Assembly: GCA_002269645.1 (NCBI GenBank) | Contig: NIVC01000684.1 | Location: 248,001 to 312,000, forward strand | DNA: 64,000 nt | From: Macrostomum lignano | Lineage: Eukaryota | Reading direction: 5' to 3' | In this document: positions 4,733 to 59,158 of the stretch, piece by piece | Layout: each line of letters starts with the position of its first letter | Numbering within the stretch: the first letter of the stretch is position 1 | The notes under the pieces: generated by a model | What the model was told of the DNA's origin: nothing | The model's input: the letters and a program-made list of their open reading frames with translations, nothing else | The model's database searches: none | Position numbers and translations under genes: made by a program

Positions 4733-17504
<12,772 letters not shown>

Positions 17505-32400: not shown

Positions 32401-35400
32401 CTGGGAATCGAGGGGCTGTAGGGGTAGACTGGGTGACTGGGTCATTGTAGAGACCATGGGAGTTGGAAGAAATCGAATTCCACCTGTATACGCAATTGAT
32501 GGTAATTTCAGTGGTGGTGGCCGTGAACTGGTCAGTGACAGTGCTGGTGCTGCTCACAGTCTGGTGCGTGTTCGATCGTGCCGGCCGTAGCTGGGTGAAA
32601 ACTCGCCGCTTTCAACAGCAACAACAGCAGCGCCAGCAGCAACGCAGAAGCGTCCTCGATGCGACGAAACGACGAAAGACTGGCAGCAGTCGGAGACGAA
32701 ATCTCAAGCATAGGTGAATTCCTGAGCAGGCACACACTCACACAGGAGTGTACAGCGGCCCTAACTTTATTTATCGTTAGGCATGTACACTTCACTGTGC
32801 CTTTGGGGTTGGCTCTCAAGCTGGGCGTTAATTGCACGAGCAGAGCCAAGTCGAGATTCCAATTTAACCCCAAATTAATGTAACTGCACTTGGAATCGAG
32901 CCTGGGCCGCTGGCTTATCAGAGCGCCGCGCTAGAATCAACACACACGCACAAACTTTTCTTTGAAAATATTGCCCGACTTAGACAGAATTCTCCGGACC
33001 GAACCCTTGCCAGGCAGTCTCTGCTTCAGTACGAACAAATCTGGGATAGAAGATTTCGTCGGATGTTCTGCTGCCTGTCCAATTCAGAAGCTGGTGGCGC
33101 AGGTTCTACTGAAGGTGCTTTTGCCGAGGTTGCTAGGCTGTTCTCGGATTTTTTCCAGGATCTGGACGTGGTACCATCGGATGTGGTGGCTGGATTAGTG
33201 CTGCTTCGGCGATGCCAGAAGCTGCTTGCTAGAGAAACGCTTAAGGTAATTTTTCAGTTTGTGATTGATAGATGAGAATAAAATGCAATTGTAAAATAGA
33301 CACTTATTTACGTGTAATGACATAAAATAGATGCAATTGTGTAAGCTCTGAGGTGTCATTGTGTAAGCTCTGAGGTGTCATTGTGTAAGCTCTGAGGTGT
33401 CATTGTGTAAGCTCTGAGGTGTCATTGTGTAAGCTCTGAGGTGTCATTGTGTTAGCTCTGAGGTGTCATTGTGTAAGCTCTGAGGTGTCATTGTGTAAGC
33501 TCTGAGGTGTCATTGTGTAAGCTCTGAGGTGTCATTGTGTAAGCTCTGGGGTGTCACTGTGTAAGCTCTGAGATGCTATTGTGTAAGCTCTGAGATGCTA
33601 TTGTGTAAGCTCTGAGGTGTCATTGTGTAAGCTCTGAGGTGCTATTGTGTAAGCTCTGAGGTGCTATTGTGTAAACTTTGAGGTGTCATTGTGTAAGCTC
33701 TGAGGTGTCATTGTGTAAGCCCTGAGGTGCTATTGTGTAAACTTTGAGGTGTCATTGTGTAAGCTCTGAGGTGTCATTGTGTAGGCCCTGAGGTGCTATT
33801 GTGTAAACTTTGAGGTGTCATTGTGTAAGCTCTGAGGTGTCATTGTGTAAGCCCTGAGGTGCTATTGTGTAAGCTGTTAACTTGTGTAGGCTGTTGTTCT
33901 GTAAACCATGTAACTTTTCAACATAGGCTCTAAGGATGAGTTAACTGTCGAAGATCAATTCTGTAACTTTTACCTATTGTTATGTAGGATACATCCAATC
34001 AAGTTCTTCAATTCATGTCGGGCCGACCAATTTACTTGTCAACAAATTTTTTGCAACTAACCGATCCAATTGAACTGAGTAATTATCGGATCGCTTTGCG
34101 TTGTATGAAATACGCACTAGCCGCCTATGGATGCCCTATGCTAGCTTATACTGGTCGGCTCTGCTGCCTGCTGTGCGATCTGAACATGTGCTGCTCCGGA
34201 AGGTTTGTTAACTATTTTGTATAGAATTTTAAATTACATTTTCTAATGTTGAAGTCTTCGGATTGCTGGTTAAAGTACATGTGGTACCACATGGAAACCT
34301 AGGAGTCGAGGATCTTAGGGTTAAAGTACATGTGGTACTCTTTAAAACCCTGGGAATCGAGGAGTTGGAGTTAAAAATATCATTGGTGATTCCCTTTAGG
34401 ACCTTAGAAATCGAGGGGCTTAGGGCTAAAATACAACTGAAACCCTTTTTAGGACCCTAGGAATTGGAGGACTTAGGTTTAAAGTACAATTGGCACCATT
34501 TTAGGACCCTAGGAATCGAGGGGCTTAGGGTTAAAGTACAAGTCGTAGTCTTGGTAATCTATGGGCTTAGGGTTAAAGTACAAGTCGTAGTCTTGGTAAT
34601 CTATGGGCTTAGGGTTAAAGTACCCGTATACTAAGAAAAATCTAACTTTTTGTAATCCTAAATACCTATAGTGCTCAAACACTAACTCGAGAAGAACGAC
34701 CAAGACGCGACAGCACTGCATCGTGCAGTTCAGCCTGTAACAGCGCAGACAATGACTACTGCGATAGTGACAATTCAGATAGATCCCAAACAGCTGGTTG
34801 TTGTTTCTCCAACCCGCTTCTGTCTCGCCTATTTGGCTGCCGATCGTACAGACCCGAAGCCAGCATTGAAGCTTTATTGAGACAGCGAGGCATTGACGGC
34901 AGCCAATTCCGATTGTTGCACCTATGCACCGATTTGGGCATCGAGCGTACGCCGTTCTACGTTGGAATTGATTATCGAATGCGACGGGTTATTGTAGCGA
35001 TTAGGGGTACTCTGTCGCTGCAAGATGTGCTCACGGATTTGACCGCCGATTCCGAAGCGATTCCCGGCTGTGGCAGCGGTGGCGGAGCTGTGGAGGACGA
35101 CAGTGACGAAGGCTGGTTCGGGCATCGGGGCATGGTTCGAACTGCTATCTATATTCAGGTGCGGTATCTAATTTTATTATTCAAAATGTACTTTTGTAAT
35201 GAAATAGTAGTAAGGGATTTTAACCCTTCGTGGTTAGAGCATCGGACTCACGAAGGAAAGGTCGGAGGTTCGATTCTCGACCCACTCTGAACAGCTTGTG
35301 TCGTTGAGCAAGAAACTTAACTCTGCATTATTTCAGTTCACCCAGCTGTAAAATGGGTGCCAGCTGGGGTAATTGAGGGTGTGTGTGGCGCCCCCCAGTC

Positions 35401-37880
35401 CTTGGACTGAACAGCCGTACGCAGCCTTCAGATGCGCCGCGCAATAGCTGCGGCTGAGCTGTCGGTTGCACATCTGGCCCGATTAGGGCAGGTTTAATTA
35501 ATTATTATTATTATCAAATACATTAATTAGTACATTGCGCACTTTTAAAGCAGTACAAAGTGTACATTCCAGGTGTATAATATGTACTTTTTAAAGTAAA
35601 AACTACTTTATTAAACTAGTACTAGGTGTACTTTTTAAAAATTGTAATACCCAAAGAATGTACTTTTGTGTTATTTTGTGGAATGGTAAAGAATGTACTT
35701 TTGTTCCATGGTACAAAATGTACTTTTCAATCATTTTCAGTCAACCCTGGCCAAGCGCAGACTAATTGAGCAGGCCCTAGACGAGCCTAATTGCCAGAAT
35801 TTCGACCTGATACTCACCGGTCACAGCCTTGGCGCTGGCATCGCCTCTATACTAGGCTTATTGATGCGACCAATCTACGGTCAACGACTGCAAGTGCTGG
35901 CGTTTAGTCCGCCTGGTGGACTTTTATCTTTATCGGCGCTTAATTATTCCAAAGAATTCATCACCTCAGTAGTGGTTGGCAAAGACGTCATACCTCGGGT
36001 TGGCCTGCCGCAGCTGGAGCAGCTCCGATCGAGTTTAGTTCGATTAATAAGCAGCTGCGAACGGCCGAAGTGGTGCATTATTGGTTCCGGCCTGTGCGGT
36101 TGCTGCTGCTGCTGCTACTGCTGCTGCTCAAACAGCGATAAAGACAGTCGGATGCTGACTACTTATAGTAGGACAGTTGATGAACTAAATGACAGGGAAG
36201 CAGCTGTACCAGCGCCTGTTGTTGCCGCGGTTACGCATCGGCCGTTGCACCTGCCTGGTAGAATTTGGCACCTGGTTCGCGAGGACAAACTGCTCAGCAG
36301 TAATAATAGTAATAATAATAGTGCTAATAATAAGCGCGGAAATAAGCGGCAAGAGAAGTTTCTAGAATTTCGAATCATCGATTCAGAGTTTACCGATTTT
36401 GAAGAGGTAATTTAACAGTTGTTTGTTGTAATACTTCTATGACACTTTGTTGCTAGGGTTGAAAATGTTACCGCGTGACAAGAATCGCTAGAGAGTCATT
36501 GGGGCGACTCTTTTGTGACGAGTCACGAGTGCATCGCGCGAGTTGCAGAATGGTAAAAAGAGTCGCGAATAAGTCGTCCAAGAGTCGTTGTATTAGCGCT
36601 TTACTTTCTACTGACTCAAGTAGACTGAATAGAGTTTGTATATGAATGGTTCAGTTCACCCAGCTGTAAAATGGGTGCCAGCATTAGCTGGAGTAATTGA
36701 GGGTGCGTGTGGCGACCTCCCAGTCCTACTAAGTGAACAGCCCCGTACGCAGCCTTCAGATGCGCCGCGCAATAGCTGCGGCTGAGCTGTCGGTTGCACA
36801 TCAAGGCAGATTGTAATCAATTATTATACCGTTGGTAGTAACTACTAGACTTGTTATAAAATAATTGACTCTTACTGACCAAATCGCCACCTTCAGGTGT
36901 TGGTGTCGCCTTCAATGGTGCAGCATCACATGGCTGATTACGTATTGGATGCGCTAGAATCAGTGGCCCCAGCAGATTTTCATGCCGATCAGTTTTTCAA
37001 CGATCAAACAATTAACGCTGACGGCGCCCATGAAGAAATTGGAGAATCAGTATTGTTGGGTACAGCGGCTACTACTGTATCAGCATCCGGTGATGCTTCA
37101 TCTTCAATTAGAGCTAGTCGGTTAGCAACTAAAAATCTGAGAACGCCCAGATCGAGTACTCTGCCATCGCGATTAGGCCCATTGACATCTAACTGGCCTC
37201 CTATCGATCAAATGAATCCCAATAATAGAAATCGGACTTCTCACGTTGCTAAGCAACTAGCCGCTGCGCCCTTGGCAACGCCGGAATCTTTATCGATAGC
37301 ATCGTCTAGGATTCTGTCTTCCAAGTTGTCAGTAGCCGCCTCCGCGGAGGACAAGCCTCTGTCGGATGAGGATGATGAAGATAGCGACAATTTTGAAATG
37401 CCAATGCGCAGTCAACTGCAAAGGCCGGTGTCTCTGCACGAAAATTTAAGCGGCTATTGTTACTACCTGTTCCCCGACGAGGAGAGCGGCAGACGGAGAC
37501 CGTTTGACGATATTTTGCCAAAGCCTAGGATTGACTTTGGTCGGATTGCCCACGCGGTTGGTAATAGGCAATTGCTGTTGAAGCAGCAACAGCAGCAGCA
37601 ATGCACTCTGCCGCACAGTTTATCCTCTTGCGAGACTTTAATCCCACCTGCTAAAGGAGAGCACAGTTTTCCAGACGACACCGTTATAGTTGTCGCATCG
37701 GCTATGCTACATACTACTGCTACTGCTAATAGTAGTAGTAGTAGTAATATTAGCAACTATAATTTCAACAGACAAGAGCCAACAGATGATTGTCAATCTG
37801 TTGAGAGGACGCCTCAAATGCTGCGTTCATCTGGTGCTGTCTTGTGCAGACACTCGGATAGAAGAGTTGATTACGTGTGA
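26431..37880 (+). CDS. DAGLA: Diacylglycerol lipase alpha. Exons: 26431-26525, 27313-27722, 31660-31770, 32512-32713, 33014-33245, 33988-34202, 34672-35158, 35741-36406, 36897-37880
   Basis: N-terminus MPGLVLFKRRWSIGSDD; four TM segments; FFQDLDVVPSDVVAGLVLL; IRGTLSLQDVLTDL; catalytic Ser in GHSLG, Asp in KDVIPR, His in QHHM; long disordered alpha-type tail. Junctions are GT-AG and in phase (the 34672 acceptor could alternatively be 34729). Confidence 0.95.
26580..27250. repeat. ~22-bp minisatellite (aaactcattctaagaaatcgcttct)
   Basis: DAGLA intron 1. Confidence 0.9.
27840..30140. repeat. 2.3-kb polypyrimidine compound repeat (ctcccttcct and variants)
   Basis: Almost exclusively C/T on the + strand; source of the spurious 803/792-aa S/P/L/F ORFs. 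Confidence 0.98.
30826..31322. repeat. 27-bp minisatellite (gtctgtctgtagatctgtagaagacct)
   Basis: DAGLA intron 2. Confidence 0.95.
31850..32450. repeat. ~45-46-bp minisatellite (gggaatcgaggggctgtaggggtagactgggtcattgtaggaccct)
   Basis: DAGLA intron 3; degenerate relatives at ~34270-34620. Confidence 0.93.
32721..32930 (-). mobile_element. Second SINE-like family with a tRNA-like head on the minus strand
   Basis: High similarity to 57201-57415; minus-strand head contains caggctcgattcc (T-arm/B-box-like). Confidence 0.7.
33335..33875. repeat. 22-bp minisatellite (gtgtaagctctgaggtgtcatt)
   Basis: DAGLA intron 5. Confidence 0.96.
35222..35510 (+). mobile_element. CORE-type tRNA-SINE, near full length
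   Basis: tRNA-like head (tggttagagc..ggttcgattc), CORE-like body ttgagcaagaaacttaactctg..cagttcacccagctgtaaaatggg, (att)n tail. Confidence 0.85.
36648..36825 (+). mobile_element. 5'-truncated CORE-type SINE
   Basis: Matches the 3' body of the 35222 and 44001 copies. Confidence 0.85.
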
Positions 37881-41002: not shown

Positions 41003-44000
41003 ATGTCGTCTCCTTCGCCGCAGTCTAAAGCCGCTACTACTTCCAGTAGTAACATAGCAAACACAGTATCAGCCTCATCGAGCTGTCCTCAAAGCATTGT
41101 CAAATCGCTTTCACCGTTGAGTTTAGACGAATTCGAAATTGTGAGCAGTGCCGCATCAGACATTGTGGACAAGCTGCCAAATTGTCACGACAATGACCGC
41201 TTGATTCGTAGAAAATCAGATGGTAAATTGCTGGTATGGAAACGGATTCACTATGGCAGTATGGACGAGCAAGAGTTGAAGATGCTACTGTCTGAACTAA
41301 TGGTTGTCAGGCAAATACGTCATCCCAATATTGTAGAATATGTTGGCAGAATTGTTGACGAAGTGAAACAGGATGTGTACATTGTTAGCGAATATTGCGC
41401 TAACGGCGACTTGACTGGCGTTATTAAGAAGCACATTCGCGAAGGGTGAGCTCATTCACTGATTAAATTGCCCATTCACCAATTAGACTTTCATTTACAT
41501 GAGTTCACCAATTAGAATTCCCTATAATCACCAATTAAAATTCCATATATTCACCAATTAGAATTGCCCATTCACCAGTCAGAATTCCCTATATTCACCA
41601 ATTAGAATTCCCTACTGTATTCCCCAATTAGAATTCCCTATATTCACCAATTAGAATTGCCCATTAACCAGTCAGAATTCCCTATATTGGATGAACACTT
41701 AAAATCAGGACTTTCCGAGTTTAGGCCATAGACAGCGGCTGCTAGCTGCTATGATGCCAGAAACTTACTGAGATGCTCTCACACTCACTAGCTATCAGTT
41801 CTGCAGCAGCAAAACTAGCAGCTCAAACCCTAACAAGCCATGCAGTCACTTAACGAAGAGCAGCGCAGACGCCTGGTCGTACAGTACAAAACTGAGCACC
41901 CCGGACAGAGCAACCATGCCATTGCTAAGTACTTCGCTGAGGTTGGGGTGGCACGCTCCACAGTCTACGCCATTCTGAATCGTTACGAAGAAGGCGGCGA
42001 AGAATCTGTGCTGCGCAGTGCTGGTTCAGGCTGCCACAGGACGGAGCTCAAGGTCACGAACGCGGAAGTGAAGAACATAATGAAGGACGCGCAACGCAGC
42101 GGGAGATCGCGCGCAAGTTTGACATCAGCCAAGCTTATGTGGGGAAAATTCTTCAGGAAAATGGCCTGAAAGCTTATAAGAAGGAGAAAGTACCAGCGGT
42201 TACTGATCAGCAGCGAGAGAGACAGCAGGTGCGTGTTGGCAGACTGTACCGAACCATCTTGGACGGACGCGGAGGCGACTTGGATCTCGTCATCGATGAT
42301 GAGTCGTACTTCCACATGTCCAGCCAAACGATTCCTGGCAACAGCTTCTACTATGCCACTGCACGCGGCGACGCTCCTGTTGAGAAGCGCGTTTCACCTC
42401 AAAATAAGTTCGGCGACAAGATCCTGGTGTGGCTGGCCATCAGCAGGCACGGGGCTTCGCGAGTGTACATGTGTCACTCCAAGACGATGAACAAGGAGCT
42501 GTACGCAAACGAGTGCATTCGCAAGCGGCTGGTGCCATTTCTCAATGAGCAGCACAGCGATGGCAATTACCTGTTCTGGCCAGATCTGGCCTCCTGCCAT
42601 TACGCCAAGGACGTGATCGAGGTGTTCCAGCAGCTGGACATCAACTTTGTCTCGAAGGAGCAGAATCCTCCCTGCGTGCCTCACCTTCGTCCAATCGAGC
42701 ACTTTTGGGGCATTTTGAAGCAGCAGGTGTACCATCATAGTTGGCAGGCTCAGACACTTCAGCAGCTGGAGAACAGAATCAAGAAATGCCTGAGGGAGAT
42801 GGACTGGTCCGTTGTACATCACATGATGGGACAGGTCAAGTCGCAGATTCGCAGGGCGCGCGCTGATGGCTTTTAATCGGCTTATTGTTAACTCTATGAT
42901 GATTCCTGTTTCTTGTTGAATACTTCCCTGTTAAAAAGTTTGGTTATCCTGTTTATAACGCCACGAAATATAAACATTAAAGACGTCCAGATTTTAAGTG
43001 TTCACCCAGTATTCACTAATTAGAATTGCCCATATTCACCAACTATAATTTCCTATATTCACGAATTAGAATTCCCTACTGTATTCCCCAATTAGAATTC
43101 TCTGTAATCATCAATTAGAATTTTCCATACTCACCAATTAGAATTCCCTATATTCACGAATTAGAATTCCCTACTGTATTCCCCAATTAGAATTCTCTAT
43201 AATCATCAATTAGAATTTTCCATACTCATTAATTAGAATTCCCGGTATGCACCAACTAGAATTCTCTATAGTCACCAATCTGAATTCCCCATATGCACCA
43301 ATTAGAATTCCCCATATTCACAAAGTCCCAATCGCCCGTATCCCCGCCAGGAAGTACATCCCGGAGCAGCAGATCTGGAAGTGGCTGACGCAGCTGTCGC
43401 TGGCTCTCCGCTGCTGCCACTGTCGCCAAGGCGTGAAGGCAGTGCTGCACAGGGATCTGAAGCCGGCCAACTGCTTCCTGGACTCTGACGGCAACCTGAA
43501 GCTGGGCGACTTCGGCCTGGCCAGGGTGCTTCGCCACAGCGGCAGCTTCGCCAGCACCTTCGTTGGCACGCCGTACTACATGAGCCCGGAGCAGATGCAG
43601 AAGAGCGCCTACACTGAGAAGTCGGACATCTGGTCTCTGGGCATTGTGGCTTACGAATTGGCCTGTCTGAGGCCTCCGTTTGTGGCCGACAAGCAGAGGG
43701 ACCTGGCAACCAGAATTCGGCGAGGCGAGTTCGAACCTCCGCCTGATTGGTACAGTTTTAGTCTGTTTAATTTGTGATACTGCAGGTGTTTTATTCAATG
43801 TCAATTAAATTTTATGTAAATTTCTCTAAGTGTTGATGAGTGTCGTAGGTTGTTCAGTAGATAATTTAGGTTGTTTCAGTAGACGATTTAGGTTCTTTGA
43901 GTAGATCAGTTAGGTTGTTTAGACGATGGTTTAGACTGCAGTTTATAATTGACAATTTAGAGGTTAGAGTTAATTTAGATTGTTTCAGAAAGAGTTTTAG

Positions 44001-45185
44001 CCTAGTGCTTAAAGTGTCGGACTCACGACTTGAAAGTCGGGGGTTCGATTCTCGATCCACTCGGAACAATTTGTGTCCTTGAGCAAGACACTTAACTCTG
44101 CATTGCTTCAGTTCACCCAGCTGTAAAATGGGTGCCAGCAAGCATTAGCTGGGGTAATTGAGGGTGCGTATGGCGACCCCCCAGTCCTTGGACTGAATAG
44201 CCGTACTCAGTCCTCAGATGCGCCGCGCAATAGCTGCGGCTGAGCTGTCGGTTGCACATCTGGCCCAATTGGGGCAGAGGTAACAAATTAATATTATTAA
44301 TTAGTTGAGCTGATTTAATCACTCTCAAACGCTCGCCACTCCAGGTACAGCCCCGCGCTGCGCACCCTGATATCCGACTGCCTGTCTGTCAATCCCGATC
44401 ACCGACCAACCGTCGAAGATCTGCTACGCCGGCCGGAGATGCGCAACCGTTTGTCCGCCAACGAATCGACGCCTGAAGCCAGCCTTCGACATTGGTCAGA
44501 TCAGCTACGCGAGCTCACGGATCTGCTCACCGCCTGGCAAGATTCTTTGACTAGGCAGGAGGTCGAACTGCGTCGACAAGAAGCGTCGCTAGCGTCGGCT
44601 GCCGCGGCCAGGCAGATGGAGCTGGAGAAACGCGAGGCTCGTCTGGACCGACTGGCTAAACAGCTGGACGAGCGGACCAAACAGCTGACTGAGCTGCAGG
44701 ACTGGCTGCGACATAGCGGCTTCACCACCTCTGCCGCTGGTGCTGCGACTTCTGCTACTTCAGTAACCACCGGCACCGACTCGTTCGGCAATAATGCCAT
44801 GCTGCTGCTCTCTAGCCACGATTCTCCACTTAACGATAAAACATTAATAAGCCAATCAAACAGAGTGCTAGTCGACATTGACAACAGTCCGCAGGCGGTT
44901 GTATCCACTACTACTACTAGTGCTATCGAGCGAGGTCGTAACTCGTCTACACTTTCTAACAATCCTACTATTAGTAGTTTTGTAGTAGTAGACGATAAAA
45001 ATGAAGAATTTGAGAACACTCTACCGGTACCGTCGATTTCTACGGATGCGATTTTGTCGCCTTGTACGGCGGCGGTGGCGACCGAGGATCTGTTGGTGCC
45101 GAGAATACCTGTGCGTTCGCCGCCTGTACCGTTGCCAAGGAAGTCAAGGATGCAGCAACTGCAGCAGAGAGCGGCTGACTGCTAA
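41003..45185 (+). CDS. NEK2: NEK2-like kinase paralog A (Gly-rich loop degenerate). Exons: 41003-41445, 43351-43749, 44345-45185
   Basis: [63 protein letters not shown], then a coiled coil; junctions are GT-AG and in phase. Confidence 0.88.
41470..43320. repeat. ~22-bp minisatellite (attagaattccctatattcacc) split by the Tc1-like insertion (41470-41686 and 43010-43320)
   Basis: The same unit occurs on both sides; removing the element restores cccta-TA-ttcac. Confidence 0.9.
41687..43009 (+). mobile_element. Tc1/mariner superfamily DD37E transposon (1323 bp) with one frameshift in the transposase
   Basis: TA TSD; ~25-bp TIRs (ttggatgaacacttaaaatcaggac vs revcomp ctgggtgaacacttaaaatctggac); VIDDESYF, FWPDLASCHY and HLRPIE with 37 residues between the second D and the E; HTH N-terminus split over ORFs 41840 and 42139. 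Confidence 0.93.
44001..44300 (+). mobile_element. CORE-type tRNA-SINE, full length
   Basis: As for 35222; lies in NEK-A intron 2. Confidence 0.88.
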
Positions 45186-45209
45186 AAACTGTTGACTGCT
45201 TAATCTACT

Positions 45210-45500
45210 AAGTGATGTCTACCCAACCCAACCTTCTAAGGTCTGTCTATGTAACCTGCTTAGGTCTATCTACCCAACCTACTAATGTCTGTCTACTGAA
45301 CCTACTTAGTTCTATCTACCCAACCTACCAAGGGCTATCACCCAACCTACCAAGGGCTATCACCCAATCTACCAAGGGCTATCACCCAATCTACCAAGGG
45401 CTATCACCCAATCTACCAAGGGCTATCACCCAACCTACGAAGGGATATCACCCAACCTAATAACGTCTATCTACCAAACCCACTAAGGTTTGTCTACCCA
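45210..45500. repeat. ~22-bp minisatellite (ctatcacccaatctaccaaggg)
   Basis: Starts ~25 bp after the NEK-A stop. Confidence 0.85.
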
Positions 45501-46279
45501 ACCTACTAAGCACCGTAAACCTACATGTACCTCTAAATTTATGTTAAACTGATTCGGTATTTCTGTCGCTTGTCCCCATGGTATGGCTGGCTTTTTTATC
45601 ATTTAAAGCTCGTCTAAAAAAAGCGTATGTGTTTTAATTCTATTTTATGATATTTCAGTTGCACGTTAGTCATTCGCTTTAAGTTAAATCGAAAATTAAA
45701 AAAAAATGTATACAGTCTTTTAGTAGCCTTGGCTGCTAAAACTTGTACTTTTAACTACATATATGTGCGTGCTTAAATACAGCGTTTTGTGGTGACCTAG
45801 CTAGTTGAATTAATATTTTTTCAACAATTTTTCTCGAAATGTTGTGCATTTTGTATTTATATCCGCTTCCTACTACTGCTAGAGCGAATTGTGTGCTAAT
45901 TTTTTTTCATGCAATCATTTTAATTTGCTACGAAAAAAAACTTTTAGCATTTCACTATTGCAATTTGGTTGAACTTATTTTACATTACGTACGGTTTTTG
46001 CTGTTTATTGCGTGTTTCTTGTAATTTTATGGACACTTTTCAATCATGTTGCTGTGTGTCAATAAAAATTTATAAATTTCTACCGATAATTTTGTTTTTG
46101 CAATAATTAATTAACAAATTGAATTAGGTGTTTTTTTCGCAATTTAGAATGATTTTTATCATTTATCATGCTAAGCCTAAAAATATATGTAACTTTCTGT
46201 GCACAAATTTATTACTTTTATAAGAAATATATTTGTTTAAAGTTTTCTTTTCAAAAGTTTTCGAATAGAAAATCTATTT

Positions 46280-47440
46280 TAGAAAGGCTATCTTAGAAAG
46301 GCTATCATAGAAAGGCTATCTTAGAAAGGCTATCTTAAAAAGGCTATCATAAAAAGGCTATCTTAGAAAGGCTATCTTAGAAAGGCCATCTTAGAAAAGC
46401 TGTCTTAGAAAGGCTATCTTAGAAAGGCTATCTTAGAAAAGCTATCTTAGAAAGGCTATCTTAAAAAGGCTATCTTAGAAAAGCTATCTTAGAAAAGCTA
46501 TCATGTAATGGCTATTTTAGAAAGGCTATCTTAGAAAAGCTATCTTAGAAAGGCTATCTTAAAAAGGCTATCTTAGAAAAGCTATCTTAGAAAAGCTATC
46601 ATGTAATGGCTATTTTAGAAAGGCTATCTTGGAAAAGTATTTCAGAAAGGCAATCATTGAAAGGCTATCATAGAAAGGCTATCTTAGAAAGTCTATCTTA
46701 GAAAAGCTATCTTAGAAAGGCTATCTTAGAAAGGCTATCTTAGAAAAGCTATCTTAGAAAGGCTATCTTAAAAAGGCTATCTTAGAAAGGCTATCTTAGA
46801 AAAGCTATCTTAAAAAGCTAGCTATCATGTAATGGCTATTTTAGAAAGGCTATCTTGGAAAAGTATTTCAGAAAGGCTATCATTGAAAGGCTATCATAGA
46901 AAGGCTATCTTAGAAAAGCTATCATGTAATGGCTATTTTAGAAAGGCTATTGTAGAAAAGCTATCATGTAATGGCTTTTTTAGAAAGGCTATCTTGGAAA
47001 AGTATTTCAGAAAGGCTATCATTGAAAGGCTATCATAGAAAGGCTATCTTAGAAAAGCTATCATGTAATGGCTATTTTAGAAAGGCTATCTTAAAAAGGC
47101 TATCTTAGAAAGGCCATCTTAGAAAGGCCATCTTAAAAAGGCTATCATTAAAAGGCTATCTTAGAAAGGCTATCTTAGAAAGGCTATCTTAGAAAAGCTA
47201 TCTTAGAAAGGCTATCTTAGAAAGGCTATCTTAGAAAAGCTATCTTAGAAAGGCTATCTTAGAAAGGCTATCTTAGAAAAGCTATCTTAAAAAGCTAGCT
47301 ATCATGTAATGGCTATTTTAGAAAGGCTATTGTAGAAAAGCTATCATGTAATGGCTATTTTAGAAAGACTATCTTGGAAAAATATTTCAGAAAGGCTATC
47401 ATTGAAAGGCTATCATAGAATAGCTATTTTAGAAAAGCTA
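46280..47440. repeat. 14-bp minisatellite (agaaaggctatctt) with higher-order blocks
   Basis: Direct array upstream of NEK-B. Confidence 0.96.
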
Positions 47441-47559
47441 GGAGGCAAGTTAAAATATTTAGGTTGTTTAAGAGAATCTTAATAGTTTTCAATCTAATAA
47501 TATTAATACATAAATATCAACTTTATGTGTAATCCTGTGGCCATATTAAATTATTATTA

Positions 47560-50500
47560 ATGTCGGGCAATACGAGCGGCAGTGGCGGCAGCAGCGGCGG
47601 CTGCAGCCTGTCAGACTATGACGTACTGTGCGAGATCGGCACCGGCTCATACGGCACTTGCGCTAAAATTCGACGCAAACGCGACGGTCTTATTCTAGTA
47701 TGGAAAGAATTAAGCTACGTCACTATGACCGAAGCTGAGAAGCGCTACCTCTGCTCCGAGGTGAACCTATTAAAGAGTTTGAGTCATCCTAATATTGTCA
47801 AATACGTTGACCGAATACACGATCGCGCTACTGGAAAGGTGTACATCATTATGGAGTATTGCGACGGCGGCGACTTGTTGAAGAGGATTCGAGCGCATCG
47901 AGAGAAAAAGTCAGTAATCCTTTATTAACTTTAGCTACTTTAAGTAGGCATAAATGCTAGCTTTTGCTACTTTCTTTTAAAATAAGTCACGTAGATACCG
48001 TAGGCTATTAGGTAGATAGAATCTGGTGAACTGGATAGACAACCTTAGTAGAACTTCCCTTGAGTAGGTTGGGTAGACAACCCTTAGTAGTGTGGGTAGA
48101 TAAGCCTTAGTAGATTGGGTAGATACCCTAGTAGAGAAACTTTAGTAGCTGGGTAGACACCCCTTAGTAAATTGGGTAGAGACCCATTAGCAGGCTGAGT
48201 AGACAACTTTGTGTAGGCTGGGTTGGGTAGACAACCCTTAGTAGTGTGGGTAGACAACTCTGAGTAGGTTAGGTAGATACCCTAGTAGAGAAACTTTAGT
48301 AGGTTGGGTAGACTCCCTTAAGTAGGTTGGATAGACAACCCTTAGTAGTGTGGGCAGATAACCCTGGATAGGTTGGGTAGACACCCTTAGTAGTGTGGGC
48401 AGATAACCATGGATAGGTTGGGTAGACACCCTTAGTAGTGTGGGCAGATAACCCTGGATAGGTTGGGTAGACACCCTTAGTAGTGTGGGCAGATAACCAT
48501 GGATAGGTTGGGTAGACACACTTAGTAGTGTAGGCAGATAACCATGGATAGGTTGGGTAGACACCCTTAGTAGGTAGAAGTAGGTAGACGCTTCAAGTAG
48601 ATTGGGTAGATACAACTTAGTAGGTTGTATAGAGAGACCTTAGTAGGTTATAGGGTGGACATCCCGTAGTTGGTTGGGTGGACACCTTTTAATATAGGTG
48701 GGTGCTGACATGACTTTATTGGATTTGGTAGACTCTACCTTCGTAGCTAACCGGTAGAAACTTCATTCAGCTCTCTAATGCATTCCAATTTCTTAGATTG
48801 TCACAGGCGACAACCTACAAATTTTAATCCCAATCGCCCGTATCCCCGCCAGGAAGTACATCCCGGAGCAGCAGATCTGGAAGTGGCTGACGCAGCTGTC
48901 GTTGGCTCTCCGCTGCTGCCACTGTCGCCAAGGCGTGAAGGCGGTGCTGCACAGGGATCTGAAGCCGGCCAACTGCTTCTTGGACTCTGACGGCAACCTG
49001 AAGCTGGGCGACTTCGGCCTGGCCAGGGTGCTTCGCCACAGCGGCAGCTTCGCCAGCACCTTCGTTGGCACGCCGTACTACATGAGCCCGGAGCAGATGC
49101 AGAAGAGCGCCTACACTGAGAAGTCGGACATCTGGTCTCTGGGCATTGTGGCTTACGAATTGGCCTGTCTGAGACCTCCGTTTGTGGCCGACAAGCAGAG
49201 GGACCTGGCAACCAGAATTCGGCGAGGCGAGTTCGAACCTCCGCCTGATTGGTACGGTTTTAGTCTGTTTAATTTGTGATACTGCAGGTGTTTTTATTGA
49301 ATGTCAATTAAATTTTATGTAAATTTCTCTAAGTGTTGATGAGTGTCGTAGGTTGTTCAGTAGATAATTTAGGTTGTTTCAGTAGACGATTTAGGTTCTT
49401 TGAGTAGATCAGTTAGGTTGTTTAGACGATGGTTTAGACTGCAGTTTATAATTGACAATTTAGAGGTTAGAGTTAATTTAGATTGTTTCAGAAAGAGTTT
49501 TAGCCTAGTGCTTAAAGCTTCGGACTCACGACTTGAAAGTCGGGGCTTCGATTCGAATTCGAATTGGCCTGTCTGAGACCTCCGTTTGTGGCCGACAAGC
49601 AGAGGGACCTGGCAACCAGAATTCGGCGAGGCGAGTTCGAACCTCCGCCTGATTGGTACGCGGACCTGTTGGTTGTTAATTAATACCGTATAGCTTGCCA
49701 TTGGTTAGTTCATTGTGTCTAACAGGTAGGTTATTATGTCTATCAAGTAGCTCATTATGTCTTAAAAGTTGGTCATTATGTCCTACAGGTAGGTCATTAT
49801 GTCTAACAGGTAGCTCATTATATCTAACAGGTAGCTCATTATGTCTAACAGGTAGCTCATTATGTCTAACAAGTAGCTTATTATGTCTAACAAGTAGCTG
49901 ATTATGTCTAACAGGTAGCTTAGTGTCCAACTTAAGCTTATGTCCAACCGGTAGCATAATATGTCTAACAGGTAGCTTAATGTCCAACTTAAGCTTATGT
50001 CCAACCGGTAGCATAATATGTCTAACAGGTAGGTCATTATGTCTAACAGGTAGGTCATTATATCTAACAGGTAGGTCATTATGTCTAACAGGTAGGTCAT
50101 TAAGTCTAACAGGTAGGTCATTATGTCTAACAGGTAGCTCATTATGTCTTACATGTAGCCCAGGTAGATCAGTTAATCAAACATATGCATATAATTCAAG
50201 TAGAGTGACATTCAGTTCAATTAATCAATCTAGCATGTACACATTGATTAGTGTAGTCTAACATACAAATTACCAGTTGTAACAGTTAGTTTACGACATA
50301 GTCTACTGTCTGCAGCGAGCGATTAAGTTAGTGCTGTATTTACACACACATTAGGATAAGTCTTTGACACCGCAATGTAACGCTGCATAAAAATATCACT
50401 TTCTGCAGTTACAGTCCGGCCCTGCGAGCTCTCATTGCCGACTGTTTGGCAGTCACGCCGGAGCATCGGCCCAGCGTTGAGGACCTGCTCCAACGACCGG

Positions 50501-50890
50501 AAATGATTCCCTATTCGGGTTCCGGAGCGGAAGAATCCATTTCGCCGGAGCGCGGCAGTCTGCAGAGCTGGGCAGATTCCCTGGCTAAGCGCGAGTCCGC
50601 AGTTCGGCGCGCCAGCGCCCAGTTGGAATCGGCGCGACTCGATTTGAAAGCGCGCCAGCGCAGCCTGTCTGAATTGGAGGCGCGATTGGCGGCGCGCGAA
50701 CGAGCGCTGATTGACGTGGAACGAAAGCTGGCTAATGGCCAGGCACAGCTGCGGTTTGAGCAGCTCAGACTGGCTGAGTCCGCCGCGGTTCAGAGATTGG
50801 TGAGTCTGTTTCTCTGTCTGTCTGTCTGTCTGCCTGTCTGTCTTTCTGTCTGTCTGCCTGCCTGCCTGCCTGTCTGTCTGTCTGCCTGCC

Positions 50891-50923
<33 letters not shown>

Positions 50924-50955
50924 GCCTGTCTGTCTGTCTGTCTGTCTGTCAGTCA

Positions 50956-50997
<42 letters not shown>

Positions 50998-51088
50998 GTC
51001 TGTCTGTCTGTCTGTCTGTCTGTCTGCCTGTCTGTCTTTCTGTCTGTCTGCCTGCCTGCCTGCCTGCCTGTCTGTCTGTCTGCCTGCC

Positions 51089-51121
<33 letters not shown>

Positions 51122-51228
51122 GCCTGTCTGTCTGTCTGTCTGTCTGTCTGCCTGCCTGCCTGTCTGCCTGTCTGTCTGTCTGTCTGTCTGCCTGTCTGCC
51201 TGTCTGCCTGTCTGTCTGTCTGCCTGCC

Positions 51229-51280
<52 letters not shown>

Positions 51281-51281
51281 A

Positions 51282-51355
<74 letters not shown>

Positions 51356-51358
51356 GCC

Positions 51359-51391
<33 letters not shown>

Positions 51392-51462
51392 GCCTGCCTG
51401 CCTGTCTGCCTGTCTGTCTGTCTGTCTGTCTGCCTGTCTGCCTGTCTGTCTGTCTGCCTGCC

Positions 51463-51497
<35 letters not shown>

Positions 51498-52156
51498 GTG
51501 TCTGTCTGTCTGTCTGCCTGTCTGTAAGTCTGTCTGTCTGTCTATCTGTAAGTCTGTCTGTCTGTCTATCTGTAAGTCTGTAAGTCTGTAAGTCTGTCAG
51601 TCTGTCTGTCTGTCTATCTGTCTATCTGTCAGTCTGTCTATCTGTAAGTCTGTCAGTCTGTCTGTCTATCTATCTGTAAGTCTGTCAGTCTGTCTGTCTG
51701 TCTATCTGTAAGTCTGTCTGTCTATCTGTAAGTCTGTCAGTCTGTCTGTCCGTCTATCTGTCTGCCTTGCCAACCTAATATATTTATTTACCACGCTCAA
51801 AATTGCAGGATGCTGCCACAAGCACGGAGCCAACTATTAGCAATGGTCGGCCGACCTGCGATCGCTGCTCCTCCTGCCAACAACTGCCGCAGTTCACAAC
51901 TCCGGACACTCCGCCACCGGAGTCTGTCGCATTGTCGGCTCCATCGGCGACGTCGTTCTCTGCGGTGTCAGTCGGTTTACCGCCGCCCGTCGTCGCATTG
52001 AACGGCCGGCAGAGACGCAGCGGCGCCAGTTCGACACCGACGAATTCTAGGAAAGTCCAGCCCGATGAGCAGCAGTCTGCGGCAGTTCGCAGGCCGCCGA
52101 TCCCCGCTCCTCGACGCTCGGTGCTTCGCGATCAAGCAAATCAATTGTATTGTTAA
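47560..52156 (+). CDS. NEK2: NEK2-like kinase paralog B (canonical). Exons: 47560-47909, 48853-49251, 50409-50799, 51809-52156
   Basis: [60 protein letters not shown] motifs, HRPSVEDLL, coiled coil; junctions are in phase. Confidence 0.92.
48000..48660. repeat. Degenerate ~20/40-bp minisatellite (gggtagacacccttagtagt...)
   Basis: NEK-B intron 1. Confidence 0.85.
49553..49659 (+). pseudogene. Duplicated 3' fragment of the shared NEK kinase exon
   Basis: cgaattggcctgtctgagacctccg...cctgattggtacg repeats ~49155-49256 and is fused to a truncated SINE head (49501-49552). Confidence 0.9.
49720..50150. repeat. 21-bp minisatellite (cattatgtctaacaggtagct/gt)
   Basis: NEK-B intron 2. Confidence 0.92.
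50810..51765. repeat. (TCTG)n compound microsatellite
   Basis: NEK-B intron 3; source of the SVCL ORFs. Confidence 0.98.
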
Positions 52157-56500: not shown

Positions 56501-59158
56501 ATGCCAAACTCCACTCAATTTGGTTACGGCAGCGACGGTAAGAGCCGTGTCGATCTGTCGAAGTCTTTGGTTAGTAAGTCATCTAACATGCAACAGACGG
56601 AGCTGCCTCAGCCTCCGCCGCCGCCGCATCCGCCTCCGCAGCGAGTCTGTAAGCCACTGGCCTGCGTGTTAAACCATCCAGTGAAGATCTACGCCCGCGG
56701 CGAGAACCCCATCAGTCCTAATGGTCAACGAGCGGCAGAAACTATCGACGCATCGATTCAAGCTTTGCGAAGTTTGCCTAGAAACTGTTCTAAGAATGCC
56801 ACAGTTCGTCAGCTGTTGTGCCAGTCCGCTATTAAGGGTAGTCGACGGAGGCAGGAGCTGATGCAGTCTTTGACGAGACCGTCAGCTGGTTCGCATTCTA
56901 ATGCTAGGTTGGTCCAGCTTTGATTAGTAATTAGTGTTGTAAGCCTAGTGGCTAGAGTGTCGGACTCCCGACTTATTATCCCACTCGGAACTATTTGTAT
57001 CTTTGAGCTTCAGCTTCAGCTTCAGTTCACCCAGCTGTAAAATGGGTGCCAGCATTAGCTGGGGTAATTGAGGGTGCGTGTGGCGACCCGCCAGTCCTTG
57101 GACTGAACAGACTGAACTGCACCCTGGCGCACTTTAAGCGATGTTGTGGCACAGCCGGCCAGAGGCGTTACTGCCCATTTCGCCGACTCCCTGAGCAATA
57201 GAGCAGGCACACACTCACACAGGAGTGTACAGCGGCCCTAACTAGCTATCGTTAGGCATGTACATTCACTGTGCCTTGGGGGGTTGGCCCTGAAGCTGGG
57301 CGTTAATTGCACGAGCAGAGCCAAGCCGAGATTCCAATTTAGCCCCCCCCCCCAAATTGATGACTGCACTTGGAATCGAGCCTGGGCCGCTGGCACATCA
57401 GAGCGCCATGGTGTCTAGATGCTCATTAACTAGTGTCTTTTCACCCGCAGCCGACGCAAAAGTCTGCCAGCTCAAGCTGCCAGCCAGCACGAGGCGACTG
57501 CCTCATCGAAAGCATCGACAGCTCAACAATCGGGTCAGCGTAGTGTGTCGCTTCGGCTTGTCGGAGGCGGCGGTCGAGAAAGAGTTCTAGCGGCTCTGTC
57601 TGAGAATGCTTCAATGGCTGCGTCTGCTGGTGGAACAAAGTCGCAATCGAAATCTCCATTGTTCTATTGTGACGACGAGTCATTAGATGAAGATGGGACG
57701 CATGCTGAGTCTGCTCAGCTCATTGAGGATGCAAAGCCTCAAGTGGAGACTGCTGGATGGGGTGAGGTTATGTTTGTTAGTTGCTGTTTTGATATTGAGA
57801 GTCTTTGTAGTGTCAATATTGAGTCTTTGTACAAACAGATGTACCATCCCAACTGTATCAATATTGAGTCTTTGTCCAAACAAATCTACCATCCCAACTG
57901 TATCAATATTGAGTCTTTGTCCAAACAGATCTACCATCCCAACTGTATCAATATTGAGTCTTTGTCCAAACAGATCTACCATCCCAACTGTATCAATATT
58001 GAGTCTTTGTCCAAACAGATCTACCATCCCAACTGTATCAATATTGAGTCTTTGTCCAAACAGATCGACCATACCAACTGTATCAATATTGAGTCTTTGT
58101 CCAAACAGATCTACCATTCCAACTGTATCAATATTGAGTCTTTGTCCAAACAGATCGACCATCCCAACTGTATCAATATTGAGTCTTTGTCCAAACAGAT
58201 CTACCATCCCAACTGTATCAATATTGAGTCTTTGTCCAAACAGATCTACCATTCCAACTGTATCAATATTGAGTCTTTGTCCAAACAGATCGACCATTCC
58301 AACTGTATCAATATTGAGTCTTTGTCCAAACAGATCGACCATTCCAACTGTATCAATATTGAGTCTTTGTCCAAACAGATCTACCATTCCAACTGTATCA
58401 ATATTGAGGCAGATCTACCAGATCTACAGATCTACCATTCCATATCTAGTCTATTTCTATTTTCCAGCTGACGACTACAACAATCCATCAGACGAATTAA
58501 CAGGCACTGATCCAGACTCCAGCAGTCTGACCCAGCTGACAGACTTGTCTCGTAATTTCGTTCTGTTGCATAGCAGACTCGACTCAGTTGAAAGCGAGTC
58601 AAAGCCCAAGACTGCCGCTTATTATCACGATGTAACTAAATCTGCTGCTGCTGCTGCTGCTGCTGATTTAAGTGTCGATGGTCGCCAACTATGCAGCAAT
58701 GCGTCCATGGATTCCTCAGGCAGCAGTTCAACTGTCACAGGGGACAGCGGCGGAGACAAAGACCCTACAGACAACAGTACATTGATGATGCGTAAAGCTG
58801 TGCGTTTCATTGATTCGTTTGGCCTAGACTTGACCTACACTAAACTGCTGGTTGATGTTGACAAGCCGCCGGCTGTACCGCCGGAGGCGCTGCTCTATCT
58901 GGACCTGAGCGGCGGTCAGGATGATGAATTAGCTGGGGCTGCCGGCTGCAGGACTAAGTGGGTTTTTTTTCTAGTCAGCTGTGTTGTTAAACACCTGCTG
59001 GGGGTGTCAGTTGCTAGGCCAGCCTACAAGCAACTCATGAACGTATAGTTGGCTCACTCAATCCTCGCCTCTAAAATGTCAGTCAATCAATCAGTCAGTC
59101 AGCCAGCCAGTCAGTCAGTCAATCAGTCAATCAATCAATCAGTCAGTCAGTCAGTCAG

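What the first reader, a model, noticed from the sequence alone, without database searches (positions are those of the whole stretch)
43327..49552. Two divergent NEK2 paralogs share a ~99% identical catalytic exon (exon-level gene conversion)
Seen: 43327-44050 and 48828-49552 are nearly identical, covering ~25 nt of upstream intron, the 399-nt HRD/DFG/activation-loop exon and ~300 nt of downstream intron up to a SINE head. The exon differs at only 4 sites that I found, all synonymous. Exons 1 and 3 are clearly diverged at protein level (e.g. ALRTLISDCLSVNPDHRPT vs [19 protein letters not shown]). Inference: recent conversion homogenised the catalytic core while the N-lobe and tail diverged, giving modular chimeric kinases. 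The SINE in B's intron appears to have been carried over from A, suggesting A-to-B direction.
Basis: partly seen in the sequence, partly recalled or inferred. Interest (0 to 1): 0.7.

Follow-up and report, generated by a model that had tools for sequence, protein, structure and literature searches.

The report
Exon-level gene conversion between flatworm NEK2 paralogs
Two old, tandem NEK2 kinase genes of the flatworm Macrostomum lignano share one almost identical catalytic exon because DNA was copied from one gene into the other, and the copying left a visible repair scar; this is a clean example of a known process, not a new kind of thing.

Summary
Window 43326-44051 (gene A) and 48828-49554 (gene B) are 98.6% identical over 727 nt. 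This covers 25 nt of upstream intron, the 399-nt HRD/DFG/activation-loop exon (4 differences, all synonymous; dS 0.045) and 302 nt of downstream intron, ending 57 nt into a SINE-like repeat. Exons 1 and 3 are saturated at synonymous sites (pS 0.75-0.89), and the other introns do not align.

The window is Macrostomum lignano contig NIVC01000684.1. A is Mlig003906g2 and B is Mlig013584g1; both are NEK2 homologues with transcript-derived gene models.

It ends at a non-homologous junction (14-nt palindrome, CGAATT filler). A second, 100%-identical copy of the last 96 nt of exon 2 plus 5 intron bases follows (49560-49660), and then B's own intron. This is the scar expected when strand synthesis on the paralog overruns and is finished by microhomology end-joining. 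It shows that at least the intron and SINE part moved from A to B.

GC3 of the shared exon is 0.82, against 0.46-0.66 in all other exons, which suggests recurrent GC-biased conversion. Gene A lacks the glycine-rich loop but keeps the other catalytic residues.

This is ordinary in kind and neat in detail. An assembly artefact is unlikely but cannot be tested here.

The parts
41003..41445 (+). Gene A (Mlig003906g2) exon 1: N-terminus and kinase N-lobe. The glycine-rich loop is degenerate (G15A, G17N, G20D in human NEK2 numbering, plus a 7-residue insertion). The beta3 Lys and alphaC Glu are kept.
   Evidence: Gene model in frame with GT-AG introns. It is identical to annotated protein P0004. The Pfam Pkinase match starts at profile position 18.
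43005..43321 (.). 23-nt satellite array in A intron 1. Its end lies 4 nt before the left edge of the shared tract. The same array at 41504-41688 is separated from it by a frameshifted Tc1/mariner-like transposon (41840-42876).
   Evidence: TRF; blastn; Pfam HTH and DDE_3 hits.
43326..44051 (+). Donor-side tract in gene A: 25 nt of intron 1, exon 2, 245 nt of unique intron 2 and 57 nt of SINE head.
   Evidence: 98.6% identical to 48828-49554.
43351..43749 (+). Gene A exon 2 (399 nt): alphaD to alphaG of the kinase, with HRD, DFG and the activation loop. GC3 is 0.82.
43995..44299 (+). Complete SINE-like interspersed element (about 305 nt) in A intron 2, with tRNA-like A/B-box sequence.
   Evidence: 85% identical full copy at 35218-35513; partial copies at 36647-36802 and 56942-57110. 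ARAGORN and Rfam are negative.
44345..45185 (+). Gene A exon 3: end of the kinase domain, coiled-coil region and tail. Diverged from B.
47560..47909 (+). Gene B (Mlig013584g1) exon 1: canonical NEK2 N-lobe (GTGSYG, K, E).
48828..49554 (+). Recipient-side tract in gene B, co-linear with A 43326-44051.
48853..49251 (+). Gene B exon 2 (399 nt). It encodes the same protein as A exon 2 and is the copy used in the annotated protein.
49498..49554 (+). Truncated SINE head in B intron 2, preceded by A's unique flank. It carries 3 differences in 57 nt, the highest density in the tract.
49551..49564 (.). Illegitimate junction: the SINE B-box sequence TTCGATT, then a CGAATT filler that repeats the next 6 nt, then exon position 304. 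It forms the 14-nt perfect palindrome ATTCGAATTCGAAT.
49560..49660 (+). Second copy of the exon-2 tail (96 nt of exon plus GTACG), lying inside B intron 2. It is 101/101 identical to 49156-49256 and matches that copy, not A, at both sites where A differs. B's own intron sequence follows.
50409..50799 (+). Gene B exon 3, diverged from A. Its first base makes the split codon Cys, where A has Trp.
51809..52156 (+). Gene B exon 4. It is separated from exon 3 by an intron made of about 241 copies of GTCT; A has no intron here.

Best explanation
Genes A and B are ancient tandem NEK2 paralogs, 5.5 kb apart on the same strand. Their middle exon evolves in concert through interlocus (ectopic) gene conversion.

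The most recent event used A as the template. A broken or stalled 3' end in B's exon 2 paired with A's exon 2. It was then extended along A, past the exon, through 245 nt of A's intron and 57 nt into A's SINE. The result is the order: exon 2, A-intron, SINE head, CGAATT filler, second exon tail, B-intron.

Shown: the tract, its boundaries, the junction, the duplicated tail, the A origin of the intron and SINE piece, and the intact reading frames of both genes.

Inferred: the repair pathway; that exon 2 had already been homogenised by earlier conversions (suggested by the near-identity of the second tail to A and by the GC3 excess); and that both genes are functional.

The consequence is that both proteins carry an identical catalytic-loop and activation-segment module (133 residues) between diverged N-lobes and tails. 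Gene A's N-lobe has lost the glycine-rich loop.
For: The tract is 717/727 identical, with sharp edges in otherwise unalignable introns.

Exon 2 has dS 0.045 and dN 0, against pS 0.75-0.89 in exons 1 and 3.

As a control, the same exon compared with paralog C has pS 0.67 and dS about 1.7 at 69% protein identity. Protein constraint therefore does not preserve silent sites. C also does not share the 25 upstream nucleotides.

B carries A's unique intron flank running seamlessly into the head of an element that is complete only in A and is dispersed elsewhere in the window.

The junction shows a filler, a palindrome and TCGA/CGA microhomology, followed by a perfect 101-nt duplicate of the exon tail.

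GC3 is 0.82 in exon 2 against 0.46-0.66 in every other exon of A and B (Fisher p 8e-10 and 3e-5), and 0.61-0.63 in C's equivalent exons.

All 4 exon differences are synonymous; the probability of this under neutrality is 0.003.

Both gene models equal the RNA-seq-derived annotation (PMC5730564).
Against: Everything rests on a single PacBio-based assembly of a neopolyploid genome that is known to contain collapsed, expanded and chimeric regions (PMC10733133). I could reach no reads and no second assembly at the DNA level.

The left edge of the tract lies in sequence with no A/B homology, right where A's satellite ends. A simple homology-bounded conversion does not predict this.

At both sites where A differs in the tail, the two B tails agree with each other. 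So either A mutated twice afterwards, or both tails have the same B origin and only the intron and SINE piece came from A. The direction for the exon itself therefore stays open.

A GC3 excess can have other causes, such as codon selection in a conserved core, although paralog C does not show it.
Confidence: 0.82

Rival explanations
1. A single one-off templated replacement (MMBIR/FoSTeS-type template switching or multi-invasion repair), with no earlier or recurring conversion. B's original, diverged exon 2 was replaced in one event by pieces copied from A. Both tail copies were copied from A at that time, and both tract edges are illegitimate junctions.
For: Divergence is similar along the whole tract: 0/25, 3/303, 2/101, 2/240. 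The two B tails are identical to each other. The left edge lies in non-homologous sequence next to A's satellite. The junction is palindromic with a filler.
Against: It needs strand invasion between exons that would then have been only about 70-75% identical (compare A vs C). It also needs two illegitimate junctions that happen to preserve the acceptor, the donor and the frame. It does not explain the GC3 excess confined to exon 2.
Confidence: 0.2
2. Assembly artefact. The near-identity or the insertion in B was created by read correction, polishing or a chimeric join in the Canu assembly of a genome with three similar subgenomes.
For: The assembly is known to have collapsed or expanded haplovariants, and 36% of its length lies in chimeric scaffolds (PMC10733133). 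The tract divergence (1.4%) is in the range of inter-subgenome divergence. An older gene model (P0002) skips both exon-2 copies.
Against: Mis-joins arise inside shared sequence. Here unique B intron abuts the tract on the left, and the SINE head abuts exon position 304 on the right, with only 3-4 nt in common. The two copies differ at 10 sites, so they are not one sequence used twice. They are only 5.5 kb apart on one contig, which I judge, from general knowledge of PacBio read lengths and not from a tool result, to be well within single long-read length. Both reading frames and all splice sites are intact and match transcript-based models.
Confidence: 0.06
3. Extreme purifying selection at the nucleotide level on the catalytic exon (for example an overlapping functional element), without any DNA transfer.
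For: The exon encodes the most conserved part of the kinase, and all four differences are synonymous.
Against: Identity continues through 25 + 302 nt of intron, including a transposable-element fragment and a 22-nt tandem repeat with the same copy number in both genes. Paralog C shows dS of about 1.7 in the same exon. No Rfam family matches.
Confidence: 0.01

Closest known systems
Interlocus (ectopic) gene conversion and concerted evolution of tandem paralogs, with exon-restricted tracts (from my own knowledge: globin genes, RHD/RHCE, red/green opsins, CYP21A2/CYP21A1P)
   Same: A short non-reciprocal tract of near-identity inside otherwise diverged tandem duplicates. Silent sites and adjacent intron are homogenised. 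Both genes keep their own flanks. GC content is elevated in the converted segment.
   Different: Here the tract end is preserved as an illegitimate junction. It carries donor intron, a transposon fragment and a duplicated piece of the exon, so the polarity and the mode of termination can be read directly from the sequence.
Polymerase-theta end-joining of aborted SDSA intermediates (Kamp et al. 2021, PMC8654963)
   Same: The sequence copied during repair synthesis is duplicated. The junction has microhomology and a short insertion that repeats neighbouring bases.
   Different: The template here was a paralog 5.5 kb away, not the sister chromatid, so foreign intron and SINE sequence was inserted together with the duplicated segment. 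This is a natural germline event that has become fixed or assembled, and the enzyme dependence is untested.
NEK2 (NIMA-related kinase 2)
   Same: Both genes hit human NEK2 far better than NEK1, NEK7 or Aurora A. The alignment runs through the kinase domain into the region after it. HRD, DFG and the activation-loop Thr are conserved.
   Different: This is a lineage-specific expansion to at least three paralogs (A, B, C). Gene A has no glycine-rich loop. The tails are unrelated to vertebrate NEK2.

Membership tests
Interlocus gene conversion between paralogs | Tract of near-identity with sharp edges inside paralogs that are much more diverged on both sides | tested here: met
   98.6% over 727 nt, against unalignable introns and exons with pS 0.75-0.89.
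Interlocus gene conversion between paralogs | Identity includes silent and non-coding sites, so it is not explained by protein constraint | tested here: met
   dS 0.045. Intron parts are at least 98% identical. The control paralog C has dS of about 1.7 in the same exon.
Interlocus gene conversion between paralogs | Non-reciprocal: both loci keep their own flanking exons, with no hybrid gene or deletion | tested here: met
   Both genes have their own exons 1 and 3(-4) in frame.
Interlocus gene conversion between paralogs | Segment-wise phylogenetic discordance using orthologues from sister species | not testable with these tools
   Neither protein search returned an orthologue from another Macrostomum species. 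Only the in-genome paralog C was available. It gives A=B at 100% and A/B-C at 69% in exon 2, against A-B 46%, A-C 41% and B-C 44% in the N-lobe.
Interlocus gene conversion between paralogs | Both copies verified in reads (not an assembly product) | not testable with these tools
   No read data are available. Exact-protein look-ups of junction-spanning ORFs found nothing.
Aborted SDSA finished by microhomology / Pol-theta end-joining | Duplication of the segment copied during repair synthesis | tested here: met
   49560-49660 is 101/101 identical to 49156-49256.
Aborted SDSA finished by microhomology / Pol-theta end-joining | Junction with microhomology and/or a short templated insertion | tested here: met
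   The join is TTCGATT|CGAATT|CGAATTGG. The filler repeats the adjacent 6 nt. TCGA/CGA is shared by the SINE B-box region and the exon. There is a 14-nt palindrome.
Aborted SDSA finished by microhomology / Pol-theta end-joining | Dependence on Pol theta / an HR intermediate | not testable with these tools
   This needs genetics.
GC-biased gene conversion footprint | GC3 raised specifically in the converted segment | tested here: met
   0.82 against 0.46-0.66 in other exons (p 8e-10 and 3e-5), and 0.61-0.63 in C's equivalent exons.
GC-biased gene conversion footprint | Excess of AT-to-GC substitutions polarised by an outgroup | not testable with these tools
   No close outgroup sequence is available.
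NEK2 kinase | Best match is NEK2, not another NEK or another kinase | tested here: met
   B: NEK2 7.5e-103 against NEK1 1e-57. A: NEK2 3.4e-89. The top named hits are NEK2 across animals.
NEK2 kinase | Complete catalytic motif set (GxGxxG, beta3 Lys, alphaC Glu, HRD, DFG) | tested here: not met
   B and C have all of them. A lacks all three loop glycines and has a 7-residue insertion, but keeps K, E, HRD, N, DFG and the activation-loop T. A is therefore NEK2-derived, but it may not be a conventional active kinase.
NEK2 kinase | Coiled-coil / leucine-zipper dimerisation region after the kinase domain | tested here: inconclusive
   The alignments to human NEK2 extend to residues 348-349 with low identity. 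No coiled-coil prediction was run.
tRNA-derived SINE | Short dispersed repeat with several diverged copies | tested here: met
   Four copies or fragments in the window besides B's fragment.
tRNA-derived SINE | tRNA-related head with A and B boxes; target-site duplication | tested here: inconclusive
   Box-like motifs are visible (TAGTGGTTAGAG, GGTTCGATTC), but ARAGORN and Rfam find nothing. No clear target-site duplication was seen.

The most novel reading that the evidence does not exclude
Exon 2 may be kept identical on purpose. Recurrent conversion, marked by the GC3 excess, would maintain the same activation-segment and C-lobe module in a canonical NEK2 (B) and in a glycine-loop-less partner (A). 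The two could then pair and trans-regulate each other, for example through heterodimerisation and trans-autophosphorylation. Conversion would in that case be selected as a co-evolution device between a kinase and its atypical paralog.
Probability: 0.08. Interest if true: 0.6.

Novelty: new member of a known kind. Interest (0 to 1): 0.38.

Why it matters
Exon-restricted gene conversion between paralogs is well known. What is less common is a natural case where the end of the tract is preserved as a readable repair scar of donor intron, transposon fragment, filler and duplicated exon piece. That scar gives the direction and the probable pathway without any population data.

The case also warns annotators of this heavily used regeneration model of two things. 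Short reads cannot tell the two NEK2 genes apart in their catalytic exon. One of the paralogs also has an atypical ATP-binding loop. Neither point changes how we understand gene conversion or NEK2.

Tried and rejected
(1) ARAGORN and Rfam on the SINE head found no tRNA or known RNA family. The label 'SINE-like' rests on copy number and box-like motifs only.

(2) Exact-protein look-ups of an ORF spanning B's junction and of A's exon-2 ORF found nothing in other assemblies. I therefore have no independent sequence support.

(3) A full-text search for the three gene identifiers found no paper.

(4) I looked for an older conversion involving paralog C. Protein distances are discordant: A/B-C is 69% in exon 2, but the paralogs are only 41-46% identical to each other in the N-lobe. 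Window-wise pS of 0.47-0.82 shows no clear tract, so I did not claim one.

(5) My first reading was that gene A lacks the catalytic lysine. This was wrong, because I had mis-placed human K37. The explicit alignment shows that A keeps it.

(6) The older UniRef models P0002, P0121 and P0122 are frame-shifted or chimeric predictions. I believe, without having confirmed it with a tool, that they derive from the earlier ML2 assembly. Mlig_3_7 re-used the previously published PacBio data, so they would not be independent evidence. They do agree with A's exon order.

The first two would already have listed any close Macrostomum orthologue, and there was none.
Full report
**Checking the observation**

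A direct alignment, a self-blast of 36-58 kb and a base-by-base comparison agree. Window 43326-44051 matches 48828-49554 at 717 of 727 positions. There are nine substitutions and one single-T indel.

On both sides the similarity stops abruptly. The tract has three parts:
- 25 nt of upstream intron, with no differences;
- a 399-nt exon (43351-43749 in copy A, 48853-49251 in copy B), with four differences;
- 302 nt of downstream intron, the last 57 nt of which are the head of an interspersed repeat.

**The two genes**

Reading frames and GT-AG boundaries give two complete genes on the + strand:
- Gene A has exons 41003-41445, 43351-43749 and 44345-45185 (560 aa).
- Gene B has exons 47560-47909, 48853-49251, 50409-50799 and 51809-52156 (495 aa).

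Both hit human NEK2 far better than any other solved kinase. B scores 7.5e-103, against 1e-57 for NEK1, and A scores 3.4e-89.

A search of the large protein collection identifies the source as Macrostomum lignano, assembly Mlig_3_7 (GCA_002269645.1), contig NIVC01000684.1. My models equal the annotated proteins BOX15_Mlig003906g2 (A) and BOX15_Mlig013584g1 (B). That annotation was built from RNA-seq by genome-guided transcript assembly (PMC5730564). Both genes are therefore transcribed with this exon structure.

A third paralog, Mlig017576 (C), is present as two copies on other contigs.

**How unusual the shared exon is**

With Nei-Gojobori counting, exon 2 has dS 0.045 and dN 0. Exon 1 has pS 0.75 at 39% protein identity. 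Exon 3 has pS 0.75-0.89. Outside the tract the introns of A and B do not align at all.

Paralog C serves as a control for protein-level constraint. The same exon compared between A and C has 69% protein identity but pS 0.67 and dS about 1.7. The 25 upstream nucleotides are not shared with C. Constraint on the protein therefore does not preserve silent sites in this family. The A/B identity must come from transfer of DNA.

All four exon differences are silent. Under neutrality this has probability 0.003, so the exon has been under purifying selection since the transfer.

In B the tract does not simply end at the SINE head. Directly after it comes the sequence TTCGATT|CGAATT|CGAATTGGCC. From there, 49560-49660 is a perfect 101-nt copy of 49156-49256. 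That stretch is the last 96 nt of exon 2 plus the first five intron bases. B's own unrelated intron follows.

The join contains a 6-nt filler that repeats the following six bases. It forms a 14-nt perfect palindrome (49551-49564). It also sits where the SINE's B-box-like sequence (TTCGATTCTCGA) and the exon (TTACGAATT) share TCGA/CGA.

The order in B is therefore: B intron 1, then 25 nt + exon 2 + A-type intron + SINE head, then filler, then the second exon tail, then B intron 2.

**Direction of transfer**

The repeat is a roughly 305-nt dispersed element. There is an 85%-identical full copy at 35218-35513 and partial copies at 36647-36802 and 56942-57110. It is complete in A (43995-44299) and truncated after 57 nt in B.

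B also shares the 245 nt of unique intron that precede the element in A, including a 22-nt tandem repeat with the same 3.5 copies. B's fragment is therefore a copy of A's insertion site and not an independent insertion. At least the intron and SINE part moved from A to B.

ARAGORN and Rfam do not recognise the head, so 'tRNA-derived SINE' remains a description by eye.

**Most likely mechanism**

The structure is what is expected when a 3' end in B's exon 2 pairs with A's exon 2 and is extended on A beyond the homologous exon. It then cannot anneal back and is joined to the other B end by microhomology-mediated end-joining.

[quoted passage not shown] The only difference here is that the template was a paralog 5.5 kb away and not the sister chromatid. 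Foreign intron and SINE sequence was therefore inserted together with the duplicated exon tail.

The density of differences is highest in the last 57 nt before the junction (3/57, against about 1% elsewhere). This fits error-prone synthesis near the end of the tract, but the numbers are small. The pathway itself is inferred and not shown.

**One event or several**

The second tail is informative. In the 101 nt where three copies can be compared, A differs at two sites (43672 and 43754). At both, the two B copies agree with each other. There are two possible readings:
- A mutated twice after the event. My hand Poisson estimate from the overall difference density is about 0.16.
- Both tails are of B origin, and only the intron and SINE piece came from A by template switching.

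In the second reading, and also if the second tail is simply B's native tail, B's exon 2 was already about 99% identical to A before the scar-forming event. That would mean conversion is recurrent.

An independent hint points the same way. GC3 is 0.82 in exon 2 of both genes, against 0.46-0.66 in every other exon (Fisher p 8e-10 and 3e-5). The equivalent exons of paralog C have GC3 of only 0.61-0.63. This is the footprint expected from GC-biased gene conversion acting repeatedly on this one exon.

I therefore favour recurrent conversion with one aberrant recent event. A single complex replacement remains possible (about 0.2).

The left edge of the tract (43326) lies 4 nt after the end of A's 23-nt satellite array, and B has unrelated sequence there. 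I cannot tell whether this is a second illegitimate junction or homology later erased by the satellite.

**Timing**

The tract is 1.4% diverged. The three subgenomes of the sequenced line differ by about 1.4-2.4% at the SNP level (PMC10733133). The two assembled copies of paralog C differ by about 4-9% in aligned blocks. The last event is thus about as old as, or younger than, the genome duplication. A copy of the locus on another subgenome could still show the earlier state, but none is annotated in this assembly.

**Could it be an assembly artefact?**

This assembly is known to contain collapsed, expanded and chimeric regions, and I could reach no reads. Several points argue against an artefact:
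- Mis-joins arise inside shared sequence. Here unique B intron abuts the tract on the left, and the SINE head abuts exon position 304 with only 3-4 shared bases.
- The two copies differ at ten sites.
- They lie 5.5 kb apart on one contig. I judge this, from general knowledge of PacBio read lengths, to be well within single long-read length.
- All frames and splice sites are intact and match transcript-derived models.

I put an artefact at about 6%.

**The proteins**

An explicit alignment with human NEK2, a nemertean NEK2 and paralog C shows that B and C have every catalytic motif. A keeps the beta3 lysine (human K37), the alphaC glutamate, HRD, Asn146, DFG and the activation-loop threonine. 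However, A has lost all three glycines of the GxGxxG loop and has a 7-residue insertion there. Its Pfam kinase match starts only at profile position 18.

An earlier reading of mine, that A lacks the catalytic lysine, was a numbering error and is withdrawn.

A's 1683-nt reading frame and splice sites are intact despite saturated silent divergence from B. This argues that A is a functional gene, possibly with altered or absent ATP binding.

The codon split by intron 2 takes its first two bases from the shared exon and its third from the unshared exon 3. It reads Trp in A and Cys in B.

**Comparison with what is known, and verdict**

This is interlocus gene conversion between tandem paralogs, restricted to one exon. 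That is a well-known process. It is joined here to a well-described aberrant ending, an aborted SDSA finished by end-joining.

The case is a tidy natural example in a model flatworm. The polarity can be read from a carried-over transposon fragment, and the mode of termination from a preserved junction. It is a new member of a known kind and is of moderate interest.

Noticed in passing
window 41840-42876 (flanked by 41504-41688 and 43005-43321): A frameshifted Tc1/mariner-like transposon (HTH domains, then a DDE_3 domain) sits inside A's intron 1. It splits a 23-nt satellite array in two. An older gene model (P0122) wrongly fuses pieces of it into a lipase-kinase protein.
   Followed up: partly
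window 43750-43755 and 44345-44350: A's intron 2 begins with GTACAG, and the exon after it also begins with GTACAG. This is a 6-nt direct repeat across the intron, as a target-site duplication would look if the intron arose by an insertion. It could be chance.
   Followed up: no
window 50804-51764: B's intron 3 consists almost entirely of about 241 copies of GTCT. Gene A has no intron at this place. In ORF listings the array reads as a long false 'CLSV' repeat protein.
   Followed up: partly
L002 8623-8871 and 9267-9434; L003 8570-8818 and 9277-9444: In paralog C (Mlig017576) the equivalent of the shared exon is split by an extra intron after '...YYMSPEQV'. A and B have therefore lost this intron, or C has gained it. 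C lies next to an arginyl-tRNA synthetase gene on both contigs.
   Followed up: partly
window 45226-45510 (+) and 48057-48573 (reverse orientation): Related 22-23-nt satellite arrays lie in inverted orientation just after A's stop codon and inside B's intron 1. They bracket the A-B intergenic region and B's exon 1.
   Followed up: no
proteins P0002, P0121, P0122: Older UniRef gene models of this locus are chimeric or frame-shifted. P0002 joins A exon 1 to B exons 1, 3 and 4 and skips both exon-2 copies. P0121 reads 8 codons into A's intron 2.
   Followed up: yes
window 9278-13457 and 27845-30166: There are two large arrays: a 4.2-kb array of a 31-nt satellite (134 copies, 94% matches) and a 2.3-kb pure polypyrimidine CT-rich array (GC skew -0.99). 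In the 40-53 kb stretch I scanned, tandem arrays lie in the introns of A and B and in the A-B intergenic region.
   Followed up: no
window 46266-47440: A 1.2-kb array of a 14-nt unit (TAGAAAGGCTATCT, 84 copies) lies in the A-B intergenic region, immediately upstream of B's start codon region.
   Followed up: no
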